From Chrysemys picta bellii (lineage: Eukaryota), in contig NC_088794.1 of the NCBI RefSeq assembly GCF_011386835.1, forward strand, positions 3,038,001-3,102,000: a DNA stretch of 64,000 bases. The letters are read 5' to 3'. Numbering within the stretch: the first letter of the stretch is position 1; the number at the start of each line of letters is the position of its first letter. Under the pieces are notes generated by a model, which saw only the letters and a program-made list of their open reading frames with translations, had not been told where the DNA came from and did not search any database. A program made the position numbers and the translations under genes. Positions 4,151-42,950 of the stretch are shown here, in pieces.

Positions 4151-4921
4151 GTGAGTGGGGGGCTGGGGAACTGGTTGGGCGGTTATGGAGGGGCAGAGCT
4201 GGGGGGGACTGGTTGGGGGGCGTGGCAGGACTGGTTGGGGTTATGGGGAGCAGAGCTGGGGGGGACTGGTTGAGGGCAGAGCCGGGGGTGTGGGGGGACT
4301 GGTTAGGGGTTATGGAAGGTCAGTGCTGGGGGCTAGGGTAGATCCGGTGGAAGGGCAGAGGATCCCAGGGTGGAGGGGAGGGTAGTGGCACTGTGGGGCA
4401 GTGCAGGGACAGGGTGGGTTGGATGGTGCTGAGAAAGGGCTGGTTGCCCCCCACCTCTAACCCCTTTGCTTCCCCCCCTCCCTGCAGGTGCCCTTCCCAT
4501 CATCTACTGCACCCTTGCCTGCTCCCCAGTTCCCCGCAGCGCTGCCCTGCTGGCCTACACGGCGCTGTCCAGCTACGCCATCATCTGCGCGGTGACGGCC
4601 CACTCCAACGTGCGGCGCCTGCGCTCCTTCGCCTGGCAGGCCCTCTTCCGCTTCTTCTTCTTCTACCTGCGCTGGGTGGGCCTGGGCACAGGCCACCCCT
4701 CCTCGCTGCGCTCGTATCTCATCATGGATGGCCTGGCCCTGCTGGGGGGCGTCATCAACGTCTCCCGCATGCCTGAGCGCTGGCAACCCGGCCGCTTCGA
4801 CTACTGGTTCAACAGCCACCAGATCATGCACGTGCTGGTGGTAGTCAGCATCCTCTACCTCCACTGGGGGGTGGTGGCCGACTTGCTGTGGGTCACCAGT
4901 TATGCCTGCCCCCAGGACTGA
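3932..4921 (+). CDS. PAQR4: Progestin and adipoQ receptor family member 4, partial gene: join(3932..4150,4488..4921); first coding exon not in window
   Basis: The spliced product ..GIPLLGFIFLLP..GSVLYHLFMNHEGG..LDMCGVCMVNTLG/ALPIIYCTLAC..PERWQPGRFDYWFNSHQIMH..ACPQD* matches recalled PAQR4 and keeps the PAQR SxxxH, D and HxxxH motifs. Introns are GT-AG and the frame is kept. Tail-to-tail with PKMYT1 as in human. Confidence 0.95.
4488..4921 (+). CDS. PAQR4: PAQR4 last coding exon
   Basis: Acceptor ccctgcag|GTGCCCTT; TGA at 4919-4921. Confidence 0.95.
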
Positions 4922-15800: not shown

Positions 15801-17065
15801 ACTCTGAGCACATGGGGCAGTGACGGGGTGGCGGTCAAGAAACAGGGTGTGCGGACTGAAAGCCAGGGGATGGGTCTAGTGGATAGAGGGGTGGGGCTGG
15901 GAGTCAGGACTCCTGGGTTCTATCCCTGGCTCTAGTGGGCCCACCTGAAGACATCAGCCGCCTCACTGTACTCCCCCTGCAGCAGCTCGGGCGCCATGTA
16001 GCGCGGGTCGCCCTCCTGGGCGTCACTCAGGTCTCCACGGTCCAACTCCAGCACCAGGCCAAAGTCGCCCAGCTTGCAGACCCGGCGCTCGGTGAGGAAG
16101 ACGTTGGCCGGCTTGACGTCCATGTGCAGCAGCCCGCAGGCGTGCAGGTGGCGCAGCGCCTGCAGCAGGTCCCAGAGGCAGGCCCGCACCTGGCCCTCGG
16201 GCAGCGTCCCGCGCCCCTCGCAATGCTGCAGCAGGCTGGCTGGGCACAGCTCCGTCTGGATGTACAGCTGCCCCCGCTCCTCCCAGGCCCGCACGAAACT
16301 CACGCAGTTGGGGTGGCGCCCCACCCGCTCGTGCTTCCGCACCTCCGCCAGCTTGCGTTGCCGGTCGCCGGCGCCCCGGAACGGCTCCACCGAGCGCTTC
16401 ACTGCGTACAGCCGCCCGTCCTCCTTGCTGCGCACCTGCAGGGGACAGGTCAGATGTGGAGGGTAGGGCCAGGACCCAGCTCCCCCGACAGATTCCCTCC
16501 TTTCCCCACAACTCTGCCCCACAGAATAGCTCCACGCTCATCCTCCTTACTGCACACAGATCAGCCACCAGTGGGGGGCAGGCTCAGCTTGAGAATCACA
16601 CTCATCCCCCAGCTGGGATCCCCCTAATCCCCCACACCCCACACGCTTTCCCCAGCTGGGATCTCCCACCCCAGGTGTCCCCCCCCTTACCTTATACACC
16701 TCCCCGAAGGAGCCGCGCCCCAGCCGGCCCAGCAGCTGGAAGCACTGGCTGAAGAAGGGCTCTCTGCGGGCAGGGTCGTAGAGGCGGCTGCGGGGGGCCA
16801 GCGCCCGGACCTGGGAGCCGCGGAAGGAGACGCTGCGCGGCCGGGGCTGGCTCCAGGGCTGTGGTTGGCGGCCGGTGAAGACCCGGCTGACAGTCAAGGT
16901 GCCCTTGTGGCGCGGTCGGGGCGGGAGGGTGTAGCTGAGCGGCCGGCCTGGCCTCTTCGCCGAGAAGCTGCGCTCGGCCTCCTGGAAGAAGGCCGGCACA
17001 GGCACCGGCAGGGGCGTGCGGCTCAGCTGGGACTCGGCCCCCGCGCAGTCCAGGGGCAGCGGCAT
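9589..17065 (-). CDS. PKMYT1: Membrane-associated Tyr/Thr Cdc2-inhibitory kinase Myt1, 578 aa: complement(join(9589..9814,10147..10245,10903..11168,11820..11992,15610..15716,15945..16435,16691..17065))
   Basis: Exons sum to 1737 nt with all phases consistent. Kinase motifs [21 protein letters not shown]-like [17 protein letters not shown] and GDPRYMAPE are present, plus the C-terminal [12 protein letters not shown] (RxL cyclin-binding) motif. P-loop Ser and Thr gatekeeper are Myt1-type, not Wee1-type. Confidence 0.97.
10147..10245 (-). CDS. PKMYT1: PKMYT1 coding exon 6
   Basis: 99 nt, phase 2-2, encodes ..SVGSTSTPR.. Confidence 0.9.
10903..11168 (-). CDS. PKMYT1: PKMYT1 coding exon 5
   Basis: ctcag|GGTGCT..GACAA|gtgagt; [29 protein letters not shown] and a poly-Glu tract. 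Confidence 0.92.
11221..11776. repeat. ~63-bp GC-skewed minisatellite (Sat-A) in a PKMYT1 intron
   Basis: Unit gggtcgggagtgaggggcaccggcagagctgggggggcagggctgggctagcaggggctgc. Confidence 0.95.
11820..11992 (-). CDS. PKMYT1: PKMYT1 coding exon 4
   Basis: 173 nt; [32 protein letters not shown]|gtgagt. Confidence 0.95.
12075..14057. mobile_element. Non-autonomous hAT (Charlie-like) element, split by a nested insertion
   Basis: Terminal inverted repeats TAGTGGTTCTCAAC (12075-12088) and GTTGAGAGCCACTG (14044-14057). Confidence 0.75.
12288..13859. mobile_element. Fold-back hAT derivative with long inverted arms carrying transposase C-terminal remnants
   Basis: TIR TAGGGCTGTCGA / TGACATCCCTA and perfect 8-bp TSD ATTCCAGT (12280-12287, 13860-13867). 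Arms ~12288-12838 and ~13283-13859 are reverse complements; both encode the ATTVPC(E/K)[13 protein letters not shown] dimerisation-domain remnant. Confidence 0.9.
14066..14701. mobile_element. hAT MITE
   Basis: 15-bp TIR CAGTGATACTCAGAC / GTCTGAGTATCACGG (14/15 match); perfect 8-bp TSD CACTAGAC (14058-14065, 14702-14709). Confidence 0.9.
14715..15438. mobile_element. Tc1/mariner (Tigger-like) MITE with GC-rich core
   Basis: TA|CAGTGGAACCCCGCTATAAC ... GTTATAGCGGGGTTCCAGTG|TA; an extra internal inverted TIR copy at 14781-14803. Confidence 0.8.
15610..15716 (-). CDS. PKMYT1: PKMYT1 coding exon 3
   Basis: 107 nt; [36 protein letters not shown]. Confidence 0.96.
15945..16435 (-). CDS. PKMYT1: PKMYT1 coding exon 2 (kinase core)
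   Basis: 491 nt; [34 protein letters not shown]. Confidence 0.97.
16691..17065 (-). CDS. PKMYT1: PKMYT1 coding exon 1 (exon acceptor at 17089; ATG at 17065)
   Basis: GCCATGC start 24 nt into the exon; [29 protein letters not shown]|gtaagg. Confidence 0.92.
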
Positions 17066-17670
17066 GGCCGGCTCTGCCAGGGGGAGGCGCTGCAGGGAAA
17101 GGGGAAAACAGCACCCGGGGTCAGCAGCGTGGCTGGGCACCGCTGGGGGGAGCGCCCAGGGGCTGCTGATGGGGGGTCTGGGGTTTCCCGGCCAGCACCC
17201 ATTGGCATGGGGGCGGGGGTCACCCCGGCACAGCTCCCGCCTCGGCTTGAACGGGAGAGTTCGGGTTGTTACCCCTTGGCGGGGCGGAGGGGTCAAGTGG
17301 GGGGCCCCTTGGTGGGGGGGAGGGGTGTGGTGAGAGGGGGTGCTGGAGTGGGGGGAGGGGTCCGGTGTGGGGGTGTTGGCGTGGGGGGCTTGGCACGAGG
17401 AGAGAGGGGTCTGGTGAGGGGGGGTTGGTGGGGGGGAGGGGGCCCCGCTGGCAGGGGGGAAAGGGGTCCAGTGATGGGGTAGCTTGGGGGGGGGCTGGTA
17501 GGGGGGAGGGGGTCTGATGGGGGTGGGGCCCGGCAGGGGGGCTGGTAGGGGGCGGGGCTGGTGGGCGGGGAAGGGGGTCCGATGGGGGTGGGGCCGCCCC
17601 TGCTCAGCCCCCCCTTGGCCTCAGCGCGGGGGACCCCGCCTGGCGCGAGCGGGGTGGGGGGGGGCCTCAC

Positions 17671-17760
17671 CTCCTCCCCGGTCCCCACGGGGCGGGGGCG
17701 CCGCGCTCGCTCCCCTCCGGGTACCCGGATGTGACGGGCTCCCCCGCAGCCCTTTCCCGC
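17671..17760 (-). other. PKMYT1: Putative non-coding first exon of PKMYT1 (5' end approximate)
   Basis: Donor GAGGAG|gtgagg at 17671/17670 inside a CpG island, just downstream of the E2F/CCAAT cluster. Confidence 0.6.
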
Positions 17761-17970
17761 GCGCGCGCCCCGAGCCAGCCCAACCGCCGCTCCGCCTGGC
17801 GCCAAAATCCCCACCGGCGCGGCGCGAGCCGCCAACCGCCTCCCGCCAACACCTCGGTAGCCAATCAGAGGCGAGAGGCCGGCATGGTCCCGTCTCCCCG
17901 CTCGTTCACCACGCCCACTCCAGCTCGGCTCTGCCGGGGGGAGCGCGGCCCAGTGACGTTCCCGCCCACA
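17740..17970 (-). promoter_or_regulatory. PKMYT1 CpG-island promoter with E2F sites and CCAAT box
   Basis: TTTCCCGC 17753-17760, TTTTGGCGCCA (rc) 17797-17807, TTGGCGGGA (rc) 17841-17849, AGCCAATCAG 17859-17868, TTCCCGCC near 17959. Confidence 0.8.
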
Positions 17971-18139
17971 ATGCACTGGGGCAACCAAAGTGTGGCCAAC
18001 CCTTCCCCCGTCTCGCCCCCCGCCGCCTCAGGCGCAGCCCCCCCACAATGGCAGCCCCCCTCTGCCATCCAACCCCCACCCCACAGGGAGGGGACAGGCC
18101 CCAAGCCCCAGCCACTGCCCATAGGGGACAACACCCCCT

Positions 18140-18610
18140 GGAAACACCCAGCCCTCCACAGGGGCAGCTCCTCTCCAGCCCCTCCCCCTCCTCAAACAAC
18201 CCCAATAACCTGGGAACCCCCAGCCCTCCACAGGGGCACCCCCTCTCCAGCCCCTCCCGCTCCTCAAACAGCCCCAATAACCTGGGAACCCCCAGCCCTC
18301 CACAGGGGCAGCCCCCTCCAGCCCCTCCCCCTCCTCAAACAACCCCAATAACCTGGGAACCCCCAGCCCTCCACAGGGGCACCCCCTCTCCAGCCCCTCC
18401 CGCTCCTCAAACAGCCCCAATAACCTGGAAACCCCCAGCCCTCCACAGGGGCAGCTCCTCTCCAGCCCCTCCCCCTCCTCAAACAACCCCAATAACCTGG
18501 GAACCCCCAGCCCTCCACCGGGGCACCCCCTCTCCAGCCCCTCCCGCTCCTCAAACAGCCCCAATAACCTGGGAACCCCCAGCCCTCCACAGGGGCAGCC
18601 CCAATAACTA
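18140..18610. repeat. 72-bp minisatellite (~6.5 copies) between the PKMYT1 promoter and the 3' end of the elastin-like gene
   Basis: cagccctccacagggg recurs at 18149, 18221, 18293, 18364, 18436, 18508 and 18580. Confidence 0.95.
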
Positions 18611-18904
18611 CCCCAGCCCCCATCTTTCGGTCAGGGGGAGATCCAGAACCTCCCCAGGGTGTCCCATATCCAGTTCCCCCCACTGGGCAAGCCAGCAGCC
18701 TGGGGAGTGTGGAGACGACCTGCATGGGTGGTTTGCATGTGGGGGGCTGAAAACCAAGGCCGCACATTTCATTCGGGAGGGAGGATCCCTCCCCTATGTT
18801 AAATACCCCAGAGAAAATAACCCATCATCTCCCCTTGGCCGGGGTAGGTAGGACTAGCCATGGTTGTCTGGACAGCCCCCCCTCCATTGTTCCCGGCTTT
18901 GATT

Positions 18905-18910
18905 TTTATT
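18905..18910 (-). terminator. Candidate polyA signal of the GREP1-like gene (alternative at 19092-19097)
   Basis: tttatt on + strand, downstream of the stop at 19624. Confidence 0.45.
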
Positions 18911-19271
18911 TGTAATTAAGAATCTAGCTGCTAGGATGGCAAAGGAAAGCTTCGAAACACGACTGGAGGAGAACCAACATCTGCCTGAGTCTTCTGAGAG
19001 CCTGCGCCGATTGCTGGGAGAGGTGTGAACTGCCCCCAGTGTAACCGGTACGGCATACAAAGATCTTGAGACTTCAGCTTTGTGTGGGATCTTTATTACA
19101 AACACTCCCACACCCCACCCTCCGGCTACAAACGAATATTTGCTGCCTATCCAGGGAAGGGGAGTTAATAACTGAGTCACCCCCCTCCGTGCATCCCATA
19201 TTCCTGGACTGACCTACCCTTAAAATCCTTCTCACCTCACTGGCCAAGACCAAAGAGGCAGGGAGGTCGGG

Positions 19272-19394
19272 TAGGGTGACCAGATGTCCCGATTTTATAG
19301 GGACAGTCCAGATATTTCGGGCTTTTTCTTATATAGATGCCAATTACCCCTCACCCCCGTCCCGATTTTTCAAACTTGCTATCTGGTCACCCTT
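19272..19394. mobile_element. ~123-bp hAT-type MITE in the 3'UTR of the GREP1-like gene
   Basis: TIRs TAGGGTGACCAGA / TCTGGTCACCCT; internal atgtcccgattttatagggacagtcc recalled as an abundant turtle MITE. Confidence 0.85.
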
Positions 19395-19623
19395 GTCCGG
19401 GGTCACCAGAAATGTTGCAGCCTCACTTTCCAAAAACAAGTTAAATTGATAGTCACCATTTGTTTTTCTTTTAAAAAGACAGATCTCGAGCCATTAAAAA
19501 TAAAGAAAAATAAAAAGAAAGATGATAATTTATATCAGGAGAAATTCTTGGTTTTTTTAGCACCAGAAGTGGCCGGCTCATGCCATCCTGTGGTGTGGAG
19601 TTCCCCAGGTGACGGTCCGGCAT

Positions 19624-19649
19624 TCAGCACTTCCCGGAAGGACAGCGAC
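19624..19649 (-). CDS. GREP1: GREP1-like terminal coding exon (GRCPSGKC*)
   Basis: Acceptor ctctttattccag|GTCGC; TGA at 19626-19624. Confidence 0.85.
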
Positions 19650-22600
19650 CTGGAATAAAGAGAGACATGGGGTCAGAGCTTCAAGAGAGCGTCACAGCTC
19701 CAAGAGTGAGTGGAGGCTGGTGCATCTGTAAGGGATGCCCACATACAGAGTGATAGAAGGCCATTCCCTCTGGGAGTCCCTGCCTCCCCCCTTCACTAGA
19801 GAAGAGGGCATGGATTCTGCATGGGACATACCATCATATATCTTACCTGCTGCACCCCCTTCCCTGAAATAACCCCCCTGAAATTCACACTGCTGTGACA
19901 TTTGCAGCCACTTCCTGCCTCAAGCCCTTAGCCAAACTGCAGAGATTCGGCTCCTTTAGCCTATGCCCTCCCCCCAGAAAACCCCCTCCAAGACTCACAC
20001 CTCTCCCCTATCTCTGAGATTCACACCCCACCGATACACATGCCTTCCCCAATTCTTACCTCTGTATCCATTCCCCAGAAAGCCGTTCAGGCCATACTTG
20101 GCCTCCTTGCCTCCTAAAAGGGGATGAGAGCAGATGAGAACCGGTCACAGGCCGTCCCGGTCTCTGCTGCCCAAAGGAGAATCGCTCTCCGTGGACAGCA
20201 CTAGAGGGCATAGGACACACACGCAAGAGCAGTTTTGGTTGCATCATCAGACAATAGGATGCAATGTGAATCTCCCCCCCGCACACTCCTACCGTATGCT
20301 GTTGGGGTTAGTCCGTAGCCCCCGGGAGCTTGCCCTGCTGTGAGTGGCCCGTATGCCCCTGCAACAGAGACAAGAGTTAGCAGGGGGCGCTGAGGGGAGT
20401 GGGGCAGGAGCACTGGCTGTGGGGGAAGCTCCCGCTACTCCAGTCCCAGGGGGGGATGCTGGGGTCGGGGGGGATCTTACCAGCAGCCAGTCCGTTAGCC
20501 TGCAGGTCCCCTCCGTTCGTATATCCTGGTCCGTTCCCGTTGCCTGCAGTGGTGGAAGGAGGAAATTAGCACAGGGAAGGGGCTTTGAGCCCCTGGGGAT
20601 GGGCACCCATGTGTCCAGACACAGGAGGAGAGCGGGCACCAATCTGGGCAGCCCCTGAGCATTTCTTACCATCCAGGGCACTGGGCCCAGCCAGTTGTGC
20701 CCCGTACATCAGCTGCCCCATGCCACCTGGAGGAGGAAACACAGTGGTGGCGGGAGATCAGCAGGAAAGCAGGAGATCCCACCAAGGGCTGGGAAGGAGA
20801 GTGGTGCTGAGACCCCAGGGAGCTTTTTCTAGGACTCTGGGACCCCGGCGTCCGGGTGGCCCTCATCCACTGGGGGCAGGGATGGGAATGGATATCCCAG
20901 CAGGGCTGCTGCACGGTTTCCTGCCAGCACCCAGCCCGGGGCACTGCAGGCCATAGGGGAAATGCCCGGGGTCTCCTGGTTAGTTTAGGCATGGCAGGGT
21001 TAGCGGGGGCCATTCTGGCACCCCACCCCACATCTCTGCACAGGGTGCGGGGGCTAAGATATTGGGCAGCCTAGCACAGACCCCTGTGCCCCAAATAACA
21101 CTCCTGGAGGGGTGACTGCCCCCTACAATCTCCTCTATAACAACCCTCTGGACAAGTTCCACCCCCCATACGAGCCCAGAGTCCCTACCCACACCTACCG
21201 TATTTCCCAGCGCTGTAGTCTCCCCCTAGACCGGTGGGCATGGCCTGTTGGGGCTGCCCATTATATGGGAGCTGGCCCAGGCCTGCAACATAGACAGAGT
21301 GTCAGGATGGGGGGATAACTCCCCTTTGTGTCCCCCTTGAGCCAGCCAGTTCCCCACACTGGGGCTGGATTGGAGCAAAAGGCCCCATGGCCCATTTCCT
21401 ATCCCCCCAAACCGGGCAGTCCCCTGCCCTGCGGTCAGGACTCACCAAATTTAGCAGCCGAGAGATCTGTGCTAGGGCCAGCGAAACGCCCTAAGTATGC
21501 GGCCTGGGCACCTGGGGATGGGATAATATAAGGCAGTTAGCTTGGCCAGTGCCCCTCACTCCCGACCCGCAGCCCCCTGCTAGCCCAGCCCTGGGCCCCC
21601 CCCAGCCCTGCCGGTGCCCCTCACTCCCGACCCGCAGCCCCTGCTAGCCCAGCCCTGGGCTCCCCCCCAGCTCTGCCGGTGCCCCTCACTCCCGACCCGC
21701 AGCCCCCTGCTAGCCCAGCCCTGGGCCCCCCCCAGCCCTGCCGGTGCCCCTCACTCCCGACCCGCAGCCCCTGCTTGCCCAGCCCTGGGCTCCCCCCCAG
21801 CTCTGCCGGTGCCCCTCACTCCCGACCCGCAGCCCCCTGCTAGCCCAGCCCTGGGCCCCCCCCCAGCCCTGCCGGTGCCCCTCACTCCCGACCCGCAGCC
21901 CCTGCTAGCCCAGCCCTGGGCCCCCCCCCCCAGCTCTGCCGGTGCCCCTCACTCCCGACCCACAGCCCCTGCTAGCCCAACCCTGGGCTCCCCCCCAGCT
22001 CTGCCGGTGCCCCTCACTCCCAACCCGCAGCCCCTGCTAGCCCAGCCCTGCCCCCCCCAGCTCTGCCGGTGCCCCTCACTCCCAACCCGCAGCCCCTGCC
22101 AGCCCAGCCCTGTCCCCCCACAGCTCTGCTGGTGCCCCTCACTCCCGACCCGCAGCCCCTGCTAGTCCATCCCTGGGCTCTCCCCCCAGCTCTGCTGGTG
22201 CCCCTCACTCCCGACCCGCAGCCCCCTGCTAACCCAGCTCTGTCCCCCCCCAGCTCTGCCAGTGCCCCTCAATCCTATCCCTCTGTCATTGGACACACCG
22301 TTGCCGTATCCTGACTGGACTCCGGCTCCAGGGTGACTGTTCCCTCCTGCACTGTAGCCTAGAAGATAGATGGGAGATCAGCCAGGCTCAGCCTTGGTGT
22401 GTGTGAAGGGGGTATATTTTGGGGTATATCCCCTTACCATTCCCATAGCCGGGCTGTGCTCCGTTGACTAGGTACCCACCGCCTACTCCGGGATAGCCTA
22501 CAGAGCCAAGAGAATCCAGATCAGCCACAAATTGGGGTGCACTGCTCCAGTCCCGGCCTCTCCCAGCAGGGGGCGCTGTGGGGAGTGGGGCAGGGCGCTG

Positions 22601-25600
22601 GCTGTGTGGGGAGCAGCCTCTCTATTCCAGCCCTGGCCTTAGCTTATGCCCCTTACCTTGTTGAGCTGTGGGGTAGCTGCCAGCTCTGGGTCCTGCCCCA
22701 AAACCTGTGGGGAGGAGAACCCAGAATGAGATCAACCCAGACCCTGAAGAATCTGGCTTCCACACTGTGGGCTCTGGCATTTGGGGGTGGGATCATGGGG
22801 GGCGGAGAGGGATAGAGTAATGGGGGGGGGTTGGTTAGCAGGGGGTTGGGACCTGTGGGGGGAGGGCTTTCAACCCCTTCAGGGCCCCCACAGCCCAGTG
22901 AGCCCTTCTCCCCCCAGGGAGTTGGAGGGTGCTCTCCTCAAGGTGTCATTGGTGTGAGTGGTGGGATCTCCAGTGAGAAAAGAAACAGGTGGTGGGGGAT
23001 GGGGAAGAGGACACAGGACGGGGCGCACATCAAGAGGGATGGAGACACTGCAGGGGACACCAATGGGGGGTGCATGGGAGGGATTCCCTGCTTTGGAGGC
23101 TTTGCCAGCCACCCCAAGGCCTGTTGGGGAGGAAAAGCAGAGGGGTCAGGGTGCGTGGGGGTGGGGGGCGTGTAGTGGAGGGCCAGGCACTGATCTCCCT
23201 GAGAAGGGGCAGTTGGAGGAGCAGAGTGGGTATGAGAATATAAGGGGCAGTGGGGTCCGACTCACCTCCCAGGGGCAGCGCAGCATGGAAGTACCCTGAA
23301 ATAGACACACAGAGTACAGGGGGAACCCTCAATCCTGACCCACAGCCCCCTGCTAGCCCAGTCCTGCCACCACAGCTCTGCTGGTGCCCCTCAATGCTGA
23401 CCCACAGCCCCTGCTAGCCCAGTCCTGCCCCCACAGCTCTGCTGGTGCCCCTCAATGCTGACCCACAGCCCCCTGCTAGCCCAGTCCTGCCCCCACAGCT
23501 CTGCCAGTGTCCCTCAATGCTGACCCACAGCCCCCTGCTATCCCAGTCCTGCCCCCACAGCTCTGCCGGTGCCCCTCAGTGCTGACCCACAGCCCCCTGC
23601 TAGCTCAGCCCTGCCCCCACAGCTCTGCTGGTGCCCCTCAATGCTGACCCACTGCCCCCTGCTATCCCAATCCTGCCCTCCACAGCTCTGCCGATGCCCC
23701 TCACTCCTGACCTGCAGCCCCCTGCCAGCCCAGTCCTGCCCGCCCCCCCAGCTCTGCTGGTGCCCCTCACTCCCGACCCGCAGCCACTTTGTTTACACTC
23801 ACCTGGTTTTTGTTTTGCACCCTGGGGATAACCACCTAATCCTGGAAAAAGGATAATGGGAATCTATGAGGATACTGGGAGGGGTGTGGAGCCTTATGGG
23901 TTAGAGCAGGGGGGCTGGGAGCCAGGACTCCTGGGTTCTATCCCCTGCTCCGAGAGGGGAGTGGGGACTGGTGGGTTCAGCCGAGGGGTAGCACCACGGA
24001 TACCCACGGCCCATTTTTGTGGCTGGCGGCTGGGCTGCGGACACAGATGTTGTACCCGCGCCGCTCACGCTCTGCACCCAGCCCTCGGGCTCCAAATCCT
24101 GCCCCGCTCTCTCCATCCCGCAGCAGCGCATGTGGCTCTGCGGGATTCTGGGAGTTGTAGTCCCAAGCTGCCTCGGCCTGAGGGGAGCGCACCAGGCGCT
24201 ATTTTGAACAAGGCGTGGTTGTGCTTTAAACTCCCGGGCAGCGGGCGCTGTGAGCAGAGTACGTCTGTGCCCGGGTGTGGGGGTGTTCCAGCCACTTGGG
24301 AGGACGGTGCTGCATGCCAGGGCCCCAGAGGGGAGGCAGCCCCCAGCCCCAAGTGGGGCCGGAGGTCCATGGGGCAGGGCAGGTGGGGTGTCTGTGGGAG
24401 GCTGAGGCTTGACACAGCCCTGTCACTGCTGTGTGGTGCCCTGCAGAGCTGTTTGTGTCCGCGCAGGGCTCAGCAGTCCTCGATGTCAGGACTCCTGGGT
24501 TCTTTCCCTTGCCAAGCCCCAGCCCCGTGCCTCAGTTTCCCTCTCCATACTTGAGGTTCACTATGGCCGTTCCCTCACCAACAGCCAGATGGGGGCAGGC
24601 TGGGGGCGGACAAGTTTCCCCCCATCCGCAGTGTCCTGGGATGTCTCTAGTTGTGCGATTGCACAAGGGAGCAGGCTTCCCCAGCTCTGCGGGGAAAGCC
24701 GGGACCCCTGCGTCCAGCCTGCACCAAATCGCCGTGCTTTGGATTCCAATCAGCCGGTGAGAGAGAGCCGTGAGCTCTCCCACACACTAGAACCCCGGCC
24801 CTCTGTCGCCCAGGTTTGGGACTCGGGGCAGTGAGGACTGCAAAGGGGACATGGGGGCGCTCCTACCTGCACCATAACCAGCGGGGACCCCATAGCCTGT
24901 GCAGAAAGAAGGAGAGAGGGGTTAGAGCCAGACATGTTTGTGGGAGAGTGCACAGTGCTGCCCACTGCTGGAGGGGATCAGGACTGTGTGTGTGTCAGGT
25001 GCCCTATAGTGCTCGGAGCTAACAGGGATTCTCCTTTAGCGCCACACTCCCCAGAGAGGACTCCAGTATTTCTATGCCCAGTGGGTCAGGGATTCACCCT
25101 GCCAAGGTGGGCAGAGAAAGGAGCCTTTGCCCTCAGTGGGGCACTCGATCTCCACTCACCTGCTTTGCCCGGCTTCACCCGTACACCTGGTGCTACTCCA
25201 AACCCGTTCTGAGTTCCTGCTGGGAACAGAGAGGAAAGGGATTAGCTGGGAGGATCAGCGGATGAGATGGGCTCCATCTCTGCTGGGGGAACAGTCCCTC
25301 TCAGATGGAGCTGGCCAGGTCTCTGCCCTGGGTGGGACGGATCTGGAAGGATCTCAGGGTGTGGGGTCTCATGACTGGAGGACATGTCTTCTGGAATCCC
25401 ACCACCCAACCGTCCCTGCTCCCGACCAGCACAGTTTGGGAAGGAGCTGAGACCAGACGTCACAAGCACAGTGGGCAGCCCCCAAACCACCCAGCAACTT
25501 CCGCCCCTAGCCTCCCACCCCCCCAGCCCCACACCCAGGGCTCACCCGGTCCCGGCTGCAGTCCTTGGGGTCCATAGCCGGTGTATGGTCCTGGAAGGAA

Positions 25601-27022
25601 GGAGCAGACACTAGGGTTGAAGGATGCAGCAAACGCACCATCACAGTTCGCTACATGGGAGTCGGACCTAGTGGGTTAGAGCAGGGGGGCCTGGAGCCAG
25701 GACTCCTGGGTTCTATCCCAGCTGTGGGAGAGAAGTGGGGTCTGGGGTAGGGGCTGGGTGTCACCCACCTGCCTTGGCTCCGGCTGGTCCCAGTCCAGCT
25801 CCAGGGTGAACTCCCCCTTCGCCTGCAACCCATATAGCACATGGGGTGAGCCAGTCCCCTGTGCGGGCCCCCCGCCCCGCTCTCCTGTTGGGAGACCATC
25901 CCCCCTCCCCTGAGAATGCTGGGTCCAGCTCAGCCAGCTAGCCAGGGACCCCCTGGGCAGCCCTGTCCCCTTTCCTCCAGCCCCTCTCTGGATCCTTCAT
26001 CCAGCCTCGTACACACCCCTTCCCTCTCTCTCTCCATCCACGCCCAGTGCCCCCTCTCTTCCCCCTAACATCACGGTCTGCCCGCTCAGGAACACCTCCC
26101 CCTGTGCCCGGCTGGGGGCGCCACTTACCCCGGATCAGCGATGGCAGGTAGAGACGCCCTAGGGCTCCGTTTGCCTGCGGTTTCACTCCTGGGAGGGGGT
26201 ACAGAGTGGGGGGCATAGGGGAGCTGTCAGAGATAGGGTATCCCTAGAGAAGCGCTGAGGTACAGGGTGGTCAGGGGACACCAAGAGGCTGGGATTCCTG
26301 GGAGATATGAGGGGATTGTGGGTTGAGGGTCCCTGCAAGAATGGGGTGGGGAGTTGGTGACCCTGGCAGAGGGGGGCACTGAGGACGGGGGGCGCTTTGG
26401 GGCAGGGACCCATGGGAAGGGAGGCTGGGAGCAACTCCAGAGCAACAGGTAGAACCCAGGAGTCCTGGTTCCCAGCCCCACGCATGGGCGAGGACAAGGG
26501 CGGCTGGCAGCACCTGAACTGGGACTTTGTGAACCAATCCAGGACTCCTGGGTTTTCTTCCAGCTCTGGGAGGGGAGTGGGTCTGGTGGGTGAGAGCAGG
26601 GGGAGCTGGGAGCCAGGACTCCTGGGTTCTCTCCCGGCTCTGGGAGGGGATGGGGGTCTGGTGGGTGAGAGCAGGGGGGGGCTGGGAGCCAGGACTCCTG
26701 GGTTCTCTCCTGGCTCTGGGAAGGGAATCAATCTAATCTCATCCTTAATTCGACCCCCGTCTCAGTTTCTCTCCCCTCAGCCAGGGGCTAGACACCCCTC
26801 CCCCGAACTGCAGAGCTGCCCCCAAGTGTCCCCTCTGGCCCCCAGGACCTGCTGCACCCCACAGGGGCAGTGCCATCATATGAGGCAGCCCTGGCCCCCC
26901 CCACTATCCCGTCCCGCCCCAGCCCCCCTGCCCTGCTCACCCCCCTGCAGGCTGCCCCTGGCCAGGCACAGCAACAACAGCAGCATCAAAAGCAGCCCAG
27001 CGTGCAGGGTCCCCAGCCCCAT
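19624..27022 (-). CDS. GREP1: Secreted glycine-rich, tropoelastin-like extracellular protein (probable GREP1/calymmin-like); 18 confident exons (327 aa) plus 1 candidate exon (347 aa)
   Basis: Signal-peptide exon, 16-17 internal exons of 30-84 nt (all multiples of 3, all phase 1-1, all GT-AG with pyrimidine tracts), and terminal exon GRCPSGKC*. The gene structure is read directly from the sequence; the name is inferred from its position between PKMYT1 and CLDN9. Confidence 0.75.
20060..20113 (-). CDS. GREP1: GREP1-like exon 17 (GGKEAKYGLNGFLGNGYR)
   Basis: 54 nt; ttttag|GAGGC..AGAG|gtaaga. Confidence 0.9.
20293..20358 (-). CDS. GREP1: GREP1-like exon 16 (GAYGPLTAGQAPGGYGLTPTAY)
   Basis: 66 nt; ttgcag|GGGCA..TACG|gtagga. 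Confidence 0.88.
20481..20543 (-). CDS. GREP1: GREP1-like exon 15 (GNGNGPGYTNGGDLQANGLAA)
   Basis: 63 nt; ctgcag|GCAAC..GCTG|gtaaga. Confidence 0.88.
20670..20726 (-). CDS. GREP1: GREP1-like exon 14 (GGMGQLMYGAQLAGPSALD)
   Basis: 57 nt; ctccag|GTGGC..GATG|gtaaga. Confidence 0.88.
21199..21282 (-). CDS. GREP1: GREP1-like exon 13 (GLGQLPYNGQPQQAMPTGLGGDYSAGKY)
   Basis: 84 nt; ttgcag|GCCTG..TACG|gtaggt. Confidence 0.9.
21446..21511 (-). CDS. GREP1: GREP1-like exon 12 (GAQAAYLGRFAGPSTDLSAAKF)
   Basis: 66 nt; ccccag|GTGCC..TTTG|gtgagt. Confidence 0.88.
21541..22270. repeat. Sat-A minisatellite array (intronic)
   Basis: C-rich strand on +, ~63-bp unit. Confidence 0.95.
22299..22358 (-). CDS. 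GREP1: GREP1-like exon 11 (GYSAGGNSHPGAGVQSGYGN)
   Basis: 60 nt; ttctag|GCTAC..AACG|gtgtgt. Confidence 0.83.
22438..22497 (-). CDS. GREP1: GREP1-like exon 10 (GYPGVGGGYLVNGAQPGYGN)
   Basis: 60 nt; ctgtag|GCTAT..AATG|gtaagg. Confidence 0.9.
22657..22704 (-). CDS. GREP1: GREP1-like exon 9 (GFGAGPRAGSYPTAQQ)
   Basis: 48 nt; ccacag|GTTTT..CAAG|gtaagg. Confidence 0.88.
23061..23120 (-). CDS. GREP1: GREP1-like candidate exon 8b (GLGVAGKASKAGNPSHAPPI)
   Basis: Strong acceptor cttttcctccccaacag, 60 nt in frame, but weak donor ATTG|gtgtcc. Confidence 0.5.
23266..23295 (-). CDS. GREP1: GREP1-like exon 8 (GYFHAALPLG)
   Basis: 30 nt; tttcag|GGTAC..GGAG|gtgagt. Confidence 0.83.
23337..23785. repeat. 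Diverged Sat-A array (intronic)
   Basis: cccctcaatgctgacccacagccccctgctagcccagtcctg variant units. Confidence 0.9.
23803..23841 (-). CDS. GREP1: GREP1-like exon 7 (GLGGYPQGAKQKP)
   Basis: 39 nt; tttccag|GATT..CCAG|gtgagt. Confidence 0.88.
24148..24162 (-). promoter_or_regulatory. ACTACA..TCCCAG motif (ZNF143/THAP11-type) in an intronic CpG-rich patch
   Basis: GACTACAACTCCCAG on minus strand; TTTGAA at 24203-24208. Confidence 0.5.
24867..24896 (-). CDS. GREP1: GREP1-like exon 6 (GYGVPAGYGA)
   Basis: 30 nt; cacag|GCTAT..GCAG|gtagga. Confidence 0.87.
25160..25219 (-). CDS. GREP1: GREP1-like exon 5 (AGTQNGFGVAPGVRVKPGKA)
   Basis: 60 nt (57 nt with the second acceptor of a CAGCAG pair); donor GCAG|gtgagt. 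Confidence 0.88.
25546..25590 (-). CDS. GREP1: GREP1-like exon 4 (GPYTGYGPQGLQPGP)
   Basis: 45 nt; ttccag|GACC..CCGG|gtgagc. Confidence 0.88.
25769..25822 (-). CDS. GREP1: GREP1-like exon 3 (GEGGVHPGAGLGPAGAKA)
   Basis: 54 nt; ttgcag|GCG..GCAG|gtgggt. Confidence 0.82.
26129..26188 (-). CDS. GREP1: GREP1-like exon 2 (GVKPQANGALGRLYLPSLIR)
   Basis: 60 nt; cccag|GAGTG..CGGG|gtaagt. Confidence 0.88.
26941..27022 (-). CDS. GREP1: GREP1-like exon 1, signal peptide MGLGTLHAGLLLMLLLLLCLARGSLQG
   Basis: gccATGG start, hydrophobic Leu core, donor GGGG|gtgagc. Confidence 0.9.
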
Positions 27023-27052: not shown

Positions 27053-27062
27053 CCCCTATATA
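27053..27062 (-). promoter_or_regulatory. TATA box of the GREP1-like gene
   Basis: TATATAGGGG on minus strand, 31-40 nt upstream of the ATG. Confidence 0.7.
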
Positions 27063-27640: not shown

Positions 27641-27771
27641 ACGGAGCAGGGGTCAACCCCTCAAGCAGGAGGTGGCACTAGGGACGCCCCCCCACAGGCA
27701 CACAAACGTTAACTGCAGCTTGTCAAAACGGGGTGTATGATTATGTAATTGTGTCTGCAATGTTGGAGTGG

Positions 27772-29281
27772 GGCTGCGGGTCGGGAGTGAGGGGCACCGG
27801 CAGAGCTGGGGGGGTGCAGGGCTGGGCTGGCAGGGGGCTGCGGGTCGGGAGTGAGGGGCACCGGCAGAGCTGGGGGAGGCAGGGCTGGGCTAGCAGGGGC
27901 TGCGGGTCGGGAGTGAGGGGCACCGGCAGAGCTGGGGGGACAGGGCTGGGCTGGCAGGGGCTGCGGGTCGGGAGTGAGGGGCACCGGCAGAGCTGGGGGG
28001 GGGCAGGGCTGGGCTGGCAGGGGCTGCGGGTCGGGAGTGAGGGGACCGGCAGAGCTGGAGGGGGCAGGGCTGGGCTAGCAGGGGCTGCGGGTCGGGAGTG
28101 AGGGGACCGGCAGAGCTGGAGGGGGCAGGGCTGGGCTAGCAGGGGCTGCGGGTCGGGAGTGAGGGGACCGGCAGAGCTGGAGGGGGCAGGGCTGGGCTAG
28201 CAGGGGCTGCGGGTCGGGAGTGAGGGGCACCGGCAGAGCTGTGGGAGGCAGGGCTGGGCTGGCAGGGGCTGCGGGTCAGGAGTGAGGGGCACCGGCAGAG
28301 CTGTGGGAGGCAGGGCTGGGCTGGCAGGGGCTGCGGGTCGGGAGTGAGGGGCACCGGCAGAGCTGGGGGAGGCAGGGCTGGGCTCGCAGGGGGCTGCGGG
28401 TCGGGAGTGAGGGGCACCGGCAGAGCTGGGGGGGCAGGGCTGGGCTAGCAGGGGCTGCGGGTCGGGAGTGAGGGGCACCGGCAGAGCTGGGGGGGCAGGG
28501 CTGGGCTCGCAGGGGGCTGCGGGTCGGGAGTGAGGGGCACCGGCAGAGCTGGGCTGGCAGGGGCTGCGGGTCGGGAGTGAGGGGCACCGGCAGAGCTGGG
28601 GGAGGCAGGGCTGGGCTAGCAGGGGCTGCGGGTCGGGAGTGAGGGGCACCGGCAGAGCAGGGGGGGCAGGGCTGGGCTAGCAGGGGCTGCGGGTTGGGAG
28701 TGAGGGGCACCGGCAGAGCTGGGGGGGGGGGGCAGGGCTGGGCTGGCAGGGGCTGCGGGTCGGGAGTGAGGGGCACCGGCAGAGCTGAGGGAGGCAGGGC
28801 TGGGCTGGCAGGGGCTGCGGGTCGGGAGTGAGGGGCACCGGCAGAGCTGGGGGGGGGGGGGGCAGGGCTGGGCTGGCAGGGGCTGCGGGTCGGGAGTGAG
28901 GGGCACCGGCAGAGCAGGGGGGAGGCAGGGCTGGGCTCGCAGGGGGCTGCGGGTCGGGAGTGAGGGGCACCGGCAGAGCTGGGGGGGGGGGGCAGGGCTG
29001 GGCTAGCAGGGGCTGCGGGTCGGGAGTGAGGGGCACCGGCAGAGCTGGGGGGGCAGGGGCTGCGGGTCAGGAGTGAGGGGCACCGGCAGAGCTGGGGGGG
29101 CAGGGCTGGGCTCGCAGGGGGCTGCGGCTCGGGAGTGAGGGGCACCGGCAGAGCTGGGGGGGCAGGGCTGGGCTGGCAGGGGGCTGCGGGTCGGGAGTGA
29201 GGGGCACCGGCAGAGCTGGGGAGAGGCAGGGCTGGGCTGGCAGGGGCTGCGGGTCGGGAGTGAGGGGCACCGGCAGAGCTG
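27772..29281. repeat. Sat-A minisatellite array (~24 units)
   Basis: G-rich strand on +. Confidence 0.95.
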
Positions 29282-29744
29282 GCCTAAGAGCCCAGGGCTG
29301 GGCTGGCCTCAGCCTCTTGTGATACAGAATTGTTAAGGGCCTCCGGTGCTGTGGGCTTCCTCCCAGCAGTGCCCTGGCAGCTGACGGCCGTGCTGGAAGC
29401 GAACGCCAGCGCGCGCCCTGCTGAGGAAGCCATAAAGCCGCAGGATAATTCGCTCTGTCTGTTGTCACCGGCCAAGGTAAACGCTGGGCCCCCGGCCCGG
29501 CTGGTAAAACACCGATCCCTGCGGTCGGCAAACAGCCCTCCAGCCAGCTCGGCAATGAGTCCGACCCGGTTGTGTCTGAAGAGTCTGGAGGTGTGGGGGA
29601 TCGTGTGTCGGGAGGGGGGGCTGACCCCCAGATCCTGCCCTATGGGGAGACCTCTGTTAGGATGGGGGGAAATGGAAGGGTCAGGGAGAGGATTGGTGTG
29701 TATGTGAGCTGCACTGCCCCCTGCTGGAGGGACCATATATAGCA

Positions 29745-31010
29745 TGGCGCCCCCTAGCACCAGGCTGGGATATGGGGCAGGGACCCCTGGGGGCACGGCG
29801 CCCCCTAGCACCAGGCTGGGATATGGGGCAGGGACCCCTGGGGGCACGGCGCCCCCTAGCACCAGGCTGGGATATGGGGCAGGGACCCCGGGGGCACGGC
29901 GCCCCCTAGCACCAGGCTGGGATATGGGGCAGGGACCCCTGGGGGCACGGCGCCCCCTAGCACCAGGCTGGGATATGGGGCAGGGACCCCTGGGGGCACG
30001 GCGCCCCCTAGCACCAGGCTGGGATATGGGGCAGGGACCCCGGGGGCACGGCGCCCCCTAGCACCAGGCTGGGATATGGGGCAGGGACCCCTGGGGGCAC
30101 GGCGCCCCCTAGCACCAGGCTGGGATATGGGGCAGGGACCCCTGGGGGCACGGCGCCCCCTAGCACCAGGCTGGGATATGGGGCAGGGACCCCTGGGGGC
30201 ACGGCGCCCCCTAGCACCAGGCTGGGATATGGGGCAGGGACCCCTGGGGGCACGGCGCCCCCTAGCACCAGGCTGGGATATGGGGCAGGGACCCCTGGGG
30301 GCACGGCGCCCCCTAGCACCAGGCTGGGATATGGGGCAGGGACCCCTGGGGGCACGGCGCCCCCTAGCACCAGGCTGGGATATGGGGCAGGGACCCCTGG
30401 GGGCACGGCGCCCCCTAGCACCAGGCTGGGATATGGGGCAGGGACCCCTGGGGGCACGGCGCCCCCTAGCACCAGGCTGGGATATGGGGCAGGGACCCCT
30501 GGGGGCACGGCGCCCCCTAGCACCAGGCTGGGATATGGGGCAGGGACCCCGGGGGCACGGCGCCCCCTAGCACCAGGCTGGGATATGGGGCAGGGACCCC
30601 TGGGGGCACGGCGCCCCCTAGCACCAGGCTGGGATATGGGGCAGGGACCCCTGGGGGCACGGCGCCCCCTAGCACCAGGCTGGGATATGGGGCAGGGACC
30701 CCGGGGGCACGGCGCCCCCTAGCACCAGGCTGGGATATGGGGCAGGGACCCCGGGGGCACGGCGCCCCCTAGCACCAGGCTGGGATATGGGGCAGGGACC
30801 CCGGGGGCACGGCGCCCCCTAGCACCAGGCTGGGATATGGGGCAGGGACCCCTGGGGGCACGGCGCCCCCTAGCACCAGGCTGGGATATGGGGCAGGGAC
30901 CCCTGGGGGCACGGCGCCCCCTAGCACCAGGCTGGGATATGGGGCAGGGACCCCTGGGGGCACGGCGCCCCCTAGCACCAGGCTGGGATATGGGGCAGGG
31001 ACCCCTGGGG
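29745..31010. repeat. Homogeneous 51-bp minisatellite (~25 copies)
   Basis: Unit ggcgccccctagcaccaggctgggatatggggcagggacccctgggggcac, with a 50-bp variant. Confidence 0.97.
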
Positions 31011-31969: not shown

Positions 31970-32630
31970 AAGGGCTGGGCTCCCCCCAGCTCTGCCGGTG
32001 CCCCTCACTCCCGACCCGCTGCCCCCCCCCAGCTCTGCCGGTGCCCCTCACTCCCGACCCGCAGCCCCTGCCAGCCCAGCCCAGCCCAGCCTCCCCAGCT
32101 CTGCCGGTGCCCCTCACTCCCGACCCACAGCCCCTGCCAGCCCAGCCCTGCCCCCGCCAGCTCTGCCGGTGCCCCTCACTCCCGACCCACAGCCCCTGCC
32201 AGCCCAGCCCTGTCCCCCCAGCTCTGCCGGTGCCCCTCACTCCCGACCCGCAGCCCCTGCCAGCCCAGCCCTGCCCCCCCCAGCTCTGCCGGTGCCCCTC
32301 ACTCCCGACCCGCAGCCCCTGCCAGCCCAGCCCTGTCCCCCCAGCTCTGCCGGTGTCCCTCACTCCTGACCCGCAGCCCCTGCCAGCCCAGCCCTGCCCC
32401 CCCCAGCTCTGCCGGTGCCCCTCACTCCCGACCCGCAGCCCCTGCCAGCCCTGCCCCCCCCCCCAGCTCTGCCGGTGCCCCTCACTCCCGACCCGCAGCC
32501 CCTGCCAGCCCAGCCCTGCCCCCCCCAGCTCTGCCGGTGCCCCTCACTCCCGACCCGCAGCCCCTGCTAGCCCATCCCTGGGCTCCCCCCACAGCTCTGC
32601 CGGTGCCCCTCACTCCCGACCCGCAGCCCC
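31970..32630. repeat. Sat-A array
   Basis: C-rich strand on +. Confidence 0.93.
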
Positions 32631-37990: not shown

Positions 37991-38155
37991 GAACTGTCTT
38001 CTGGCCTTGTCTCTCCACTACAACCTACCTTGCCTTGGTGTCTCCAGCCGATCCCCACACACAATTATTTCCTGGGCTTCTCTCTCTGCTCCGACGCCCT
38101 TGGGTCCCTACTAGGATCCCTGCTTCGCTCCTGTTGGCTTCCTCCTCCTCCAGCA

Positions 38156-38806
38156 ATGTCTTCTGCAGGGCTGGAGCTCTTGGGCATGGGGCTATGCATC
38201 TTTGGCTGGCTGGGCTCCATCATCTCCTGTGCCCTGCCCATGTGGAAGGTGACGGCCTTCATCGGCAACAACATCGTGGTGGCGCAGACCATCTGGGAGG
38301 GGCTGTGGATGAATTGCATTGTGCAGAGCACGGGCCAGATGCAGTGTAAGGTCTATGACTCTATGCTGGCACTGCCCCAGGACCTGCAGGCCGCCCGCGC
38401 CCTCATGGTCATCTCGGTGCTGCTGGCCGTGCTGGCCTTGCTGGTGAGCGTCGTGGGCGCCAAGTGCACCAACTGCGTGGAGGACGAAGGCGCCAAGGCG
38501 CGGATCATGATTGTTTCCGGTGCCGTCTTTGTGGTCTCCGGCATCCTCTGCCTCATCCCCGTGTGCTGGTCGGCCAACACCATCATCCGGGACTTCTACA
38601 ACCCGCTGGTGTCTGAGGCCCTGAAGCGGGAGCTGGGGGCGGCGCTATATGTGGGGTGGGCAGCCGCCGCCCTGCTGGTTCTCGGGGGGGCTCTGCTTTG
38701 CTGCTCCTGCCCACCCCGCTCAGAGAGATACCCACCCCGGGTCGGGTACATGGCGGCTGCCAGGTCTGGGGTGGGCAGCGGGGTGGACAAGAGGGACTAC
38801 GTGTGA
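38156..38806 (+). CDS. CLDN9: Claudin-9 (CLDN6/9 clade), 216 aa, CDS in a single exon
   Basis: W-x-GLW-C-C claudin signature and 4 TM segments. [26 protein letters not shown] and the C-terminal RSG..SG.DKRDYV (PDZ motif YV) match recalled CLDN9 better than CLDN6. The ATG sits 2 nt after a splice acceptor (ctcctccag|caATG). Confidence 0.9.
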
Positions 38807-42940: not shown

Positions 42941-42950
42941 NNNNNNNNNN
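42941..42950. other. Assembly gap (10 N)
   Basis: nnnnnnnnnn in the sequence. Confidence 1.

What the first reader, a model, noticed from the sequence alone, without database searches (positions are those of the whole stretch)
19624..27022. Hidden tropoelastin-like secreted protein gene built from 18-19 symmetric mini-exons
Seen: absent from the ORF track, but a TATA box, a signal-peptide exon and 16-17 exons of 30-84 nt join in frame. Every intron is phase 1 (G|Gx) and the product is a 327-347 aa Gly/Pro/Ala/Tyr-rich, acid-poor protein. It has Lys pairs (KPGK, KQK, KASK, KEAKY), AAKF/GKY exon ends, and ends in CPSGKC. Known: tropoelastin has the same cassette architecture, KxxK/KP cross-link domains for lysyl oxidase, and a C-terminal C-x4-C (CLGKAC). 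Human GREP1 lies between PKMYT1 and CLDN9, was long annotated as non-coding, and is poorly characterised. Inference: a compact reptilian elastomeric or cross-linkable matrix protein of unknown function (skin, shell, notochord sheath or eggshell membrane are candidates).
Basis: partly seen in the sequence, partly recalled or inferred. Interest (0 to 1): 0.88.

Follow-up and report, generated by a model that had tools for sequence, protein, structure and literature searches.

The report
Reptile GREP1: secreted glycine-rich mini-exon gene
The stretch holds a real, expressed gene for a secreted, glycine/tyrosine-rich matrix protein built from about 17 tiny in-frame exons; by position it is the counterpart of the known but little-studied human gene GREP1, and it resembles elastin in gene layout, not in sequence make-up.

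Summary
On the minus strand, 27022 to 19624, 20 candidate exons with canonical AG/GT borders join in frame. Every intron is phase 1. Public spliced contigs from four runs (four studies, three organism labels) use the predicted borders to the base for 15 junctions. They skip three predicted exons: 25822-25769, 23120-23061 and 19858-19832. The dominant mRNA therefore has 17 exons and encodes 308-309 aa. The product has a hydrophobic signal peptide. The mature chain is 28% Gly, 12% Ala, 9.5% Pro and 8.5% Tyr, has 5 acidic residues, and ends in C-x4-C.

The gene lies between a PKMYT1 exon and CLDN9, with PAQR4 beyond. This matches the human GREP1/LINC00514 position at 16p13.3. Two exons are conserved, with the same phase, on a distant species' genomic contig whose intron does not align.

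Best reading: the reptile orthologue of GREP1, a secreted disordered matrix protein. The elastin likeness is limited to exon architecture and the C-terminal Cys pair. Val-rich hydrophobic domains and poly-Ala-Lys cross-link domains are absent.

The spliced protein has no reference, so I could not compare it with GREP1, ELN or calymmin by sequence. Interest is moderate: a known family, but an elastin-like build that no paper in the searched library mentions.

The parts
27056..27062 (-). TATA-like box (TATATAG) with a GGGGCGGGG GC box just upstream; 40 nt before the ATG
   Evidence: sequence only, transcription start not mapped
26941..27022 (-). Exon 1: ATG, hydrophobic signal peptide (L-rich core), ends in phase 1, donor GTGAGC
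   Evidence: not covered by the reads laid
26129..26188 (-). Exon 2 (60 nt), N-terminus of the mature protein
   Evidence: its 3' border is joined to exon 4 in run X11 (loose end at 25591)
25769..25822 (-). Predicted cassette exon 3 (54 nt), skipped in the X11 contig
   Evidence: in frame, use unproven
25546..25590 (-). Exon 4 (45 nt)
   Evidence: joints on both sides
25160..25219 (-). Exon 5 (60 or 57 nt) with NAGNAG acceptor at 25219/25216; holds KPGK
   Evidence: joint 25215->25545 (cut +1) in X10 and X13; both forms appear in X11 loose ends
24867..24896 (-). Exon 6 (30 nt)
23803..23841 (-). Exon 7 (39 nt), holds KQK
23266..23295 (-). Exon 8 (30 nt)
23061..23120 (-). Predicted cassette exon 9 (60 nt, KASK, weak donor GTGTCC), skipped in all four runs
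   Evidence: joint 22702->23264 joins exon 10 directly to exon 8
22657..22704 (-). Exon 10 (48 nt)
22438..22497 (-). Exon 11 (60 nt), paralogue of exon 12 (both start GY and end GYGNG)
22299..22358 (-). Exon 12 (60 nt)
21446..21511 (-). Exon 13 (66 nt), conserved on contig L001 (69 nt, same phase)
21199..21282 (-). Exon 14 (84 nt, the longest), 72% identical at protein level to an exon on L001
20670..20726 (-). Exon 15 (57 nt)
20481..20543 (-). Exon 16 (63 nt)
20293..20358 (-). Exon 17 (66 nt)
20060..20113 (-). Exon 18 (54 nt), holds KEAK
19832..19858 (-). Predicted 27-nt exon 19 with weak acceptor: probably not an exon. It is skipped in the three runs that cover the junction and carries a 2-nt insertion in a related organism
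   Evidence: joint 19647->20058; table 4, place 19835
19624..19649 (-). Last exon: ...RCPSGKC then TGA (19626-19624), the only two Cys of the mature chain
21545..22275 (.). Intronic 65-bp GC-rich minisatellite (11 copies), spliced out; the same family fills much of 27.7-36.4 kb
23326..23785 (.). Intronic 62-bp minisatellite (7 copies) of the same family
15935..16537 (-). Neighbour: PKMYT1 kinase-domain exon
   Evidence: Pkinase, 5e-34; Myt1 chains 1e-66 against Wee1 4e-22
38153..38803 (+). Neighbour: single-exon CLDN9
   Evidence: PMP22_Claudin; claudin-9 2.6e-103, full length, better than claudin-4 and claudin-3
4433..4918 (+). Neighbour: PAQR-family exon (PAQR4 by position)
   Evidence: HlyIII 6e-15

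Best explanation
[quoted passage not shown] The gene is TATA-driven and built from a signal-peptide exon plus about 16 mini-exons of 30-84 nt. All are phase 1-1 and each ends on the first G of a Gly codon, so any exon can be included, skipped or duplicated without breaking the frame. The product of about 285 residues is secreted and predicted to be intrinsically disordered. It is rich in Gly, Ala, Pro, Tyr, Gln and Asn, basic (pI about 9.6) and almost free of acidic residues. Its only two Cys form a C-terminal C-x4-C. Inferred mechanism: it is a self-associating component of the extracellular matrix. About 24 Tyr set in GYG/GY/YG contexts, with Gly/Gln/Asn/Pro spacers, would drive weak multivalent association (coacervate- or fibre-like). 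The few Lys pairs, together with Gln and Tyr, are possible enzymatic cross-link sites. The C-terminal disulfide loop would dock it to other matrix proteins. Shown here: gene structure, splicing, expression, conservation of two exons, and synteny. Inferred: secretion, disorder, self-assembly, cross-linking, and orthology at the sequence level.
For: Gene model with 19 of 19 phase-1 introns and canonical splice sites. Fifteen junctions are confirmed to the base in contigs of four runs from four studies and three organism labels. In X10 and X11 the spliced contigs have word depth of 1400-2400, against 3-13 for unspliced pieces. Synteny is PAQR4 - PKMYT1 - gene - CLDN9. Human LINC00514 lies at chr16:2,988,256-3,002,016, 16p13.3 (PMC7500027) and was renamed GREP1 (PMC9877250). 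That PKMYT1 and CLDN9 flank it in human is my own knowledge. Human GREP1 is secreted, cleaved, glycine-rich, conserved and disordered, and pulls down fibronectin and EMILIN2 (bioRxiv 10.1101/2020.03.10.981001). Exons 13 and 14 are conserved with the same borders and phase on a distant species' genomic contig whose intron does not align.
Against: Orthology therefore rests on position and protein character. A search of 1.84 billion representatives with exon 14 returned no full-length named relative. The E1-E2 junction and the signal-peptide cleavage are unverified. Run kind is only guessed as RNA, although the GT-AG joints argue strongly for RNA. Tissue is unknown.
Confidence: 0.8

Rival explanations
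1. It is a true member of the elastin lineage: an ELN paralogue or calymmin-like gene sharing ancestry with tropoelastin. It would work as tropoelastin does, by coacervation of hydrophobic domains followed by lysyl-oxidase cross-linking of paired Lys into desmosine-type links.
For: All exons are phase 1-1 with the codon split after G, as in ELN (the ELN structure is from established knowledge). Cassette exons are skipped in frame. The C-terminal exon holds the only two Cys as C-x4-C with GK inside, like the tropoelastin C-terminus. It has a few KxxK/KxK pairs, very few acidic residues and a basic pI. Human GREP1 binds EMILIN2, an elastin-microfibril interface protein.
Against: Val is 2.8%, against more than 10% in tropoelastin. 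There is no VPG, one GVG, no KAA or poly-Ala-Lys domain, and no alternation of hydrophobic and cross-link exons. Tyr 8.5%, Gln 6.7% and Asn 4.6% are foreign to elastin. There is no basic RKRK tail. The locus is PKMYT1/CLDN9, not the ELN neighbourhood. Phase 1-1 Gly-split exons can arise by exon duplication in any Gly-rich gene; exons 11 and 12 are such a pair.
Confidence: 0.1
2. It is a lineage-specific Gly/Tyr-rich structural gene, for example of skin appendage, shell or egg envelope. It would occupy the PKMYT1-CLDN9 interval by chance and be unrelated to mammalian GREP1.
For: No sequence-level link to GREP1 was obtained. The exon-14 search found only one other, non-mammalian-looking contig. 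Gly/Tyr-rich proteins have arisen many times. Spliced-contig depth is very high in two runs, as expected for a structural protein.
Against: Same interval, same secreted Gly-rich disordered character and similar gene size as GREP1. An independent origin at the same place is unparsimonious.
Confidence: 0.08
3. The chain of open mini-exons is chance or a non-coding transcript, so no protein is made.
For: The DNA is GC-rich and open frames are common. Human GREP1 was long listed as non-coding.
Against: Fifteen a-priori predicted junctions are used exactly. All exon lengths are multiples of 3, all 19 introns are phase 1, and the frame is intact over 927-930 nt. Two exons are conserved while the intron between them is not. 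Human GREP1 is translated and secreted.
Confidence: 0.02

Closest known systems
[quoted passage not shown]
   Same: Position next to PKMYT1 and CLDN9. Signal peptide. Gly-rich, disordered, matrix-type protein. A multi-exon gene easily missed as coding.
   Different: Sequence identity was not measured here. Nothing is known of reptile function. The human work concerns cancer-cell dependency and GDF15, not matrix mechanics.
Tropoelastin (ELN)
   Same: Every exon is phase 1-1 with the codon split after the first G. In-frame cassette skipping. Gly/Ala/Pro-rich, acid-poor and basic. The only Cys pair sits in the last exon as C-x4-C. A few Lys pairs.
   Different: No Val-rich VPGVG-type hydrophobic domains, no poly-Ala KAAK cross-link domains and no RKRK tail. 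Rich in Tyr, Gln and Asn. About 285 residues against about 750. Different locus.
Calymmin (zebrafish cmn)
   Same: Secreted elastin-like matrix protein made of many small exons. It lies in the outer notochord sheath (PMC10081202), the tissue lineage that corresponds to where mouse Grep1 is expressed (inner annulus fibrosus, PMC13082079).
   Different: Calymmin has at least 54 exons and is described as zebrafish-specific. No sequence or synteny comparison was done here.
Gly/Tyr-rich elastomers and low-complexity assemblers (resilin, MaSp2/flagelliform silk GPGGY/GPGQQ motifs, high-Gly-Tyr keratin-associated proteins)
   Same: Motif style (GYG, PGGYG, GYGPQG, GNG). Tyr as likely sticker or dityrosine site. 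No G-X-Y collagen period.
   Different: Resemblance in composition only, recalled from knowledge. Unrelated lineages; no test was done.

Membership tests
GREP1 | Lies between PKMYT1 and CLDN9 (16p13.3 block, PAQR4 beyond PKMYT1) | tested here: met
   Searches place the gene in that interval in the window. The human coordinates of LINC00514 come from PMC7500027. The human flanking genes are from my own knowledge.
GREP1 | N-terminal signal peptide; secreted | tested here: inconclusive
   Residues 8-20 form a Leu-rich hydrophobic core (mean Kyte-Doolittle up to 3.5), followed by small residues. No SignalP run and no experiment.
GREP1 | Glycine-rich, low-complexity, disordered chain | tested here: met
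   Gly 28%; G+A+P+Y 58%; 5 acidic residues in 283. Disorder is inferred from composition.
GREP1 | Significant sequence similarity to human or mouse GREP1 | not testable with these tools
The single-exon search found no named relative.
Tropoelastin | All exons phase 1-1, in-frame cassettes | tested here: met
   19 of 19 introns are phase 1. Exons are skipped in frame.
Tropoelastin | Alternating Val/Gly/Pro hydrophobic domains (VPGVG-like) and Lys cross-link domains (KA and KP types) | tested here: not met
   Val 2.8%; VPG 0, GVG 1, KAA 0, AAK 1; three Lys pairs in the dominant isoform.
Tropoelastin | C-terminal exon with disulfide C-x4-C followed by a basic RKRK tail | tested here: inconclusive
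   C-x4-C is present (CPSGKC) and holds the only Cys of the mature chain. There is no basic tail; the chain ends at the second Cys.
Tropoelastin | ELN locus and sequence homology | tested here: not met
   The locus is PKMYT1/CLDN9. Sequence homology was not testable.
Fibrillar or other collagens | Gly at every third residue (G-X-Y) | tested here: not met
   Gly autocorrelation at lag 3 is 0.74 of expectation.
Calymmin | Sequence similarity or shared locus with zebrafish cmn | not tested
   No cmn sequence or locus was available in the tools. Only literature statements.

The most novel reading that the evidence does not exclude
GREP1 would be a third vertebrate elastin-type protein, beside ELN and calymmin: a compact, Tyr-based rather than Val-based, self-coacervating and enzymatically cross-linked elastomer of notochord-sheath or annulus-type and other elastic matrices. 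It would be built on the same phase-1 Gly-split cassette logic. Its C-terminal disulfide loop would dock it to the microfibril/EMILIN scaffold. On this reading the cancer phenotypes of human GREP1 would be side effects of a matrix protein.
Probability: 0.2. Interest if true: 0.65.

Novelty: new member of a known kind. Interest (0 to 1): 0.4.

Why it matters
GREP1 entered the human protein-coding set only recently and has no accepted physiological role. This work shows an intact, highly expressed, exon-for-exon in-frame counterpart in a reptile, with at least two exons conserved in a more distant species. That argues for an old, constrained matrix protein rather than a young 'non-canonical ORF'. 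The exon logic (all phase 1, Gly-split, skippable cassettes), the Tyr-rich repeats and the terminal Cys pair suggest concrete experiments on self-assembly and cross-linking. They also tie in with two reports: that human GREP1 binds EMILIN2 and fibronectin, and that mouse Grep1 marks the inner annulus fibrosus. For genome scanning, the case shows that mini-exon genes are invisible to ORF tracks yet can be predicted from sequence with base-level accuracy.

Tried and rejected
1. Pfam scans of 30 long open frames around the gene. Most were empty GC-rich frames; only the PKMYT1, CLDN9 and PAQR exons hit.

2. Search of 1.84 billion representatives with exon 14 as a 30-aa reference. There were three hits. 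Two are unrelated repeat proteins (P0001, P0003). One is a 93-aa ORF that contains the orthologous exon (P0002).

3. The search for homologous proteins with P0002, hoping to walk to spliced, longer or named proteins. Only P0002 itself was returned. The length window of that tool (0.55-1.75 times the query) shuts out full-length relatives for any exon-sized query, and no stop-free in-frame stretch of 200 aa or more exists around any exon.

4. blastn of L001 against the window found nothing at 1e-3. Only the exons align, by hand.

5. tblastn of CLDN9 against the window found no second claudin.

6. Supplement look-up and PubMed-id look-up for the GREP1 paper: not held.

7. The scan's own notes hold nothing on GREP1 or elastin in this genome.

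8. I rejected the idea that the intronic 62-65-bp arrays are hidden exons. They are spliced out and belong to a minisatellite family spread over the intergenic 27.7-36.4 kb.

9. I rejected collagen: there is no G-X-Y period.
Full report
**1. What is in the sequence**

The feature is on the minus strand. Reading down from the ATG at 27022, I anchored 20 candidate exons and checked them by script.

- Exon 1 (27022-26941, 82 nt) encodes M-G-L-G-T-L-H-A-G, then a run of Leu/Met/Cys, and ends one base into a codon.
- Each following exon is a multiple of 3 (27-84 nt). Each is preceded by AG and followed by GT.
- Every intron is therefore phase 1.
- The split codon is G|Gx at 18 of 19 introns. The exception is the acceptor of exon 5, a NAGNAG (25219/25216) that gives Ala or Gly.
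- The last exon (19649-19624) reads ...R-C-P-S-G-K-C-stop.
- The maximal ORF is 356 aa.
- A TATATAG box with an adjacent GC box lies 40 nt upstream of the ATG.

**2. Is it used?**

One call of read laying on window:19600-25599 with four runs gave spliced contigs in every run. The runs come from four studies and carry three organism labels. They are kept as contigs, and their kind is only guessed as RNA.

- The skipped segments end in CT..AC on the plus strand, which is GT..AG on the gene's strand.
- After the stated cut offsets, the joints fall exactly on the predicted borders: 19649|20060, 20113|20293, 20358|20481, 20543|20670, 20726|21199, 21282|21446, 21511|22299, 22358|22438, 22497|22657, 22704|23266, 23295|23803, 23841|24867, 24896|25160 and 25216|25546.
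- A loose end at 25591 in X11 continues with the plus-strand letters of the 3' end of exon 2 (26129 onward). This gives the junction 25590|26129.
- In X10 and X11 the spliced contigs have mean word depth of about 1400-2400. Contiguous, unspliced pieces of the same region have 3-13. These runs therefore hold mature mRNA in quantity.

Three predicted exons are not in the dominant form.

- Exon 9 (23120-23061, weak donor GTGTCC) is skipped in all four runs.
- Exon 19 (19858-19832, weak acceptor) is skipped in the three runs that cover the junction. It also carries a 2-nt insertion in the unspliced contig of a related organism (place 19835), so it is probably not coding.
- Exon 3 (25822-25769) is skipped in the one contig that reaches it.

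The main mRNA thus has 17 exons and encodes 309 aa, or 308 aa with the downstream NAGNAG site. The table listed only the best-supported joints (69 more were not shown), so minor inclusion of exons 3 or 9 is not excluded. The E1-E2 junction lay outside the 6000 nt allowed.

**3. The product**

- After the hydrophobic leader, the chain of about 283-286 residues is 28% Gly, 12% Ala, 9.5% Pro, 8.5% Tyr, 8% Leu, 6.7% Gln and 4.6% Asn.
- It has 10 Lys and 7 Arg but only 5 Asp+Glu. The pI is about 9.6.
- Its two Cys are both in the last exon.
- Tyr sits mostly next to Gly (GY 13, YG 11, GYG 6).
- Gly shows no three-residue period, so this is not a collagen.
- Exons 11 and 12 are a duplicated pair. 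Both are 60 nt, start GY and end GYGNG, and share a motif in the upstream intron. This shows growth by exon duplication, which by itself explains the uniform phase.

**4. Surroundings**

- A kinase exon at 15935-16537 (minus) matches Myt1/PKMYT1 chains at 1e-66, against 4e-22 for Wee1.
- A 217-aa single-exon ORF at 38153-38803 (plus) matches claudin-9 end to end at 2.6e-103, better than claudin-4 or claudin-3.
- An exon at 4433-4918 (plus) carries the PAQR (HlyIII) domain.
- The order is PAQR4 - PKMYT1 - this gene - CLDN9.
- Much of the space between the gene and CLDN9 is arrays of a 62-65-bp GC-rich minisatellite, in both orientations, plus a 51-bp array. The same minisatellite family lies in two introns of the gene.

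**5. Relatives elsewhere**

I therefore searched with exon 14 alone, as window:21194-21283:- (30 aa), against 1.84 billion representatives.

- The only meaningful hit is P0002, a 93-aa ORF called on a 1320-nt genomic Logan contig (L001).
- That contig carries an 84-nt exon 72% identical at protein level to exon 14.
- It also carries, 555 nt upstream, a 69-nt exon clearly related to exon 13.
- Both exons have AG/GT borders and phase 1. The intron and flanks do not align with the window.
- Exon-only conservation in a distant species supports purifying selection on the coding sequence.
- A follow-up search with P0002 found nothing more.

**6. Identity**

- LINC00514 lies at chr16:2,988,256-3,002,016, 16p13.3 (PMC7500027).
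- From my own knowledge, PKMYT1 and CLDN9 flank that interval in human and PAQR4 abuts PKMYT1.
- Human GREP1 is secreted and cleaved. [quoted passage not shown]
- Mouse Grep1 (1520401A03Rik) marks the inner annulus fibrosus (PMC13082079).

Position, orientation within a conserved block and protein character all fit. I take the gene to be the reptile GREP1 orthologue with confidence 0.8. The missing piece is a direct alignment.

**7. How elastin-like is it?**

What is shared with tropoelastin:
- uniform phase 1-1 exons split after G;
- in-frame cassette skipping;
- a Gly/Ala/Pro-rich, acid-poor, basic chain;
- a terminal exon holding the only Cys pair as C-x4-C with GK inside.

What is not shared:
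- Val is 2.8%.
- There is no VPG, one GVG, and no poly-Ala-Lys block.
- Hydrophobic and cross-link exons do not alternate.
- There is no RKRK tail.
- Tyr, Gln and Asn are abundant.

The locus is not that of ELN. The gene therefore fails the defining protein features of tropoelastin. It may still work like an elastomer, and its motif style is nearer to Tyr-based elastomers such as resilin or GPGGY/GPGQQ silks. That comparison is from memory and untested. Calymmin is an elastin-like notochord-sheath protein of zebrafish with at least 54 exons (PMC10081202). It is an attractive relative given where mouse Grep1 is expressed, but nothing was tested. No paper in the searched library mentions vertebrate GREP1 together with elastin.

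**8. Verdict**

The gene is real, expressed and conserved. It is most likely GREP1. The 'tropoelastin-like' label holds for gene architecture and the C-terminus only. Novelty is that of a new member of a known, poorly understood family. The elastin-type build gives a testable functional hypothesis.

Noticed in passing
window 27770-29282, 32023-32630, 34046-35081, 35263-36390; also introns at 21545-22275 and 23326-23785: One family of 62-65-bp GC-rich minisatellites (core CCCCTCACTCCCGACCCGCAGCCCCTGC...) occurs in at least six arrays in both orientations. It fills much of the PKMYT1-CLDN9 interval and causes the many spurious long ORFs on both strands.
   Followed up: partly
window 29742-31010: A 51-bp tandem repeat with 25 copies at 99% identity, so very young or homogenised. 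It is open in several frames on both strands.
   Followed up: no
window 23800-23999 (also 25690-25720, 26540-26720): Copies of a dispersed element with the core CAGGACTCCTGGGTTC. Contig depth there reaches 14,000-27,000 in three of the four runs (about 1,400 in X11), with many joints to other places. This points to a highly repeated, transcribed SINE-like element inside the introns.
   Followed up: no
window 25216-25219: A NAGNAG tandem acceptor at exon 5. Both forms are seen in contigs, differing by one codon (Ala-Gly against Gly).
   Followed up: yes
window 16550-18850: A region of 72% GC between the PKMYT1 kinase exon and the 3' end of the gene. It holds a 444-aa ATG ORF on the plus strand (17517-18851) with no Pfam match. 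It is probably the PKMYT1 5' exon and CpG island rather than a separate gene.
   Followed up: partly
window 19150-19626: No canonical AATAAA or ATTAAA within 470 nt downstream of the stop. Only TATAAA variants at 19534 and 19299. The poly(A) site is unknown.
   Followed up: partly
window 42941-42950: A run of 10 N (assembly gap or mask); left untouched.
   Followed up: no
L001 1-186: The Logan contig that carries the orthologous exons 13 and 14 has another called 61-aa ORF at its start. It is probably intronic noise.
   Followed up: no
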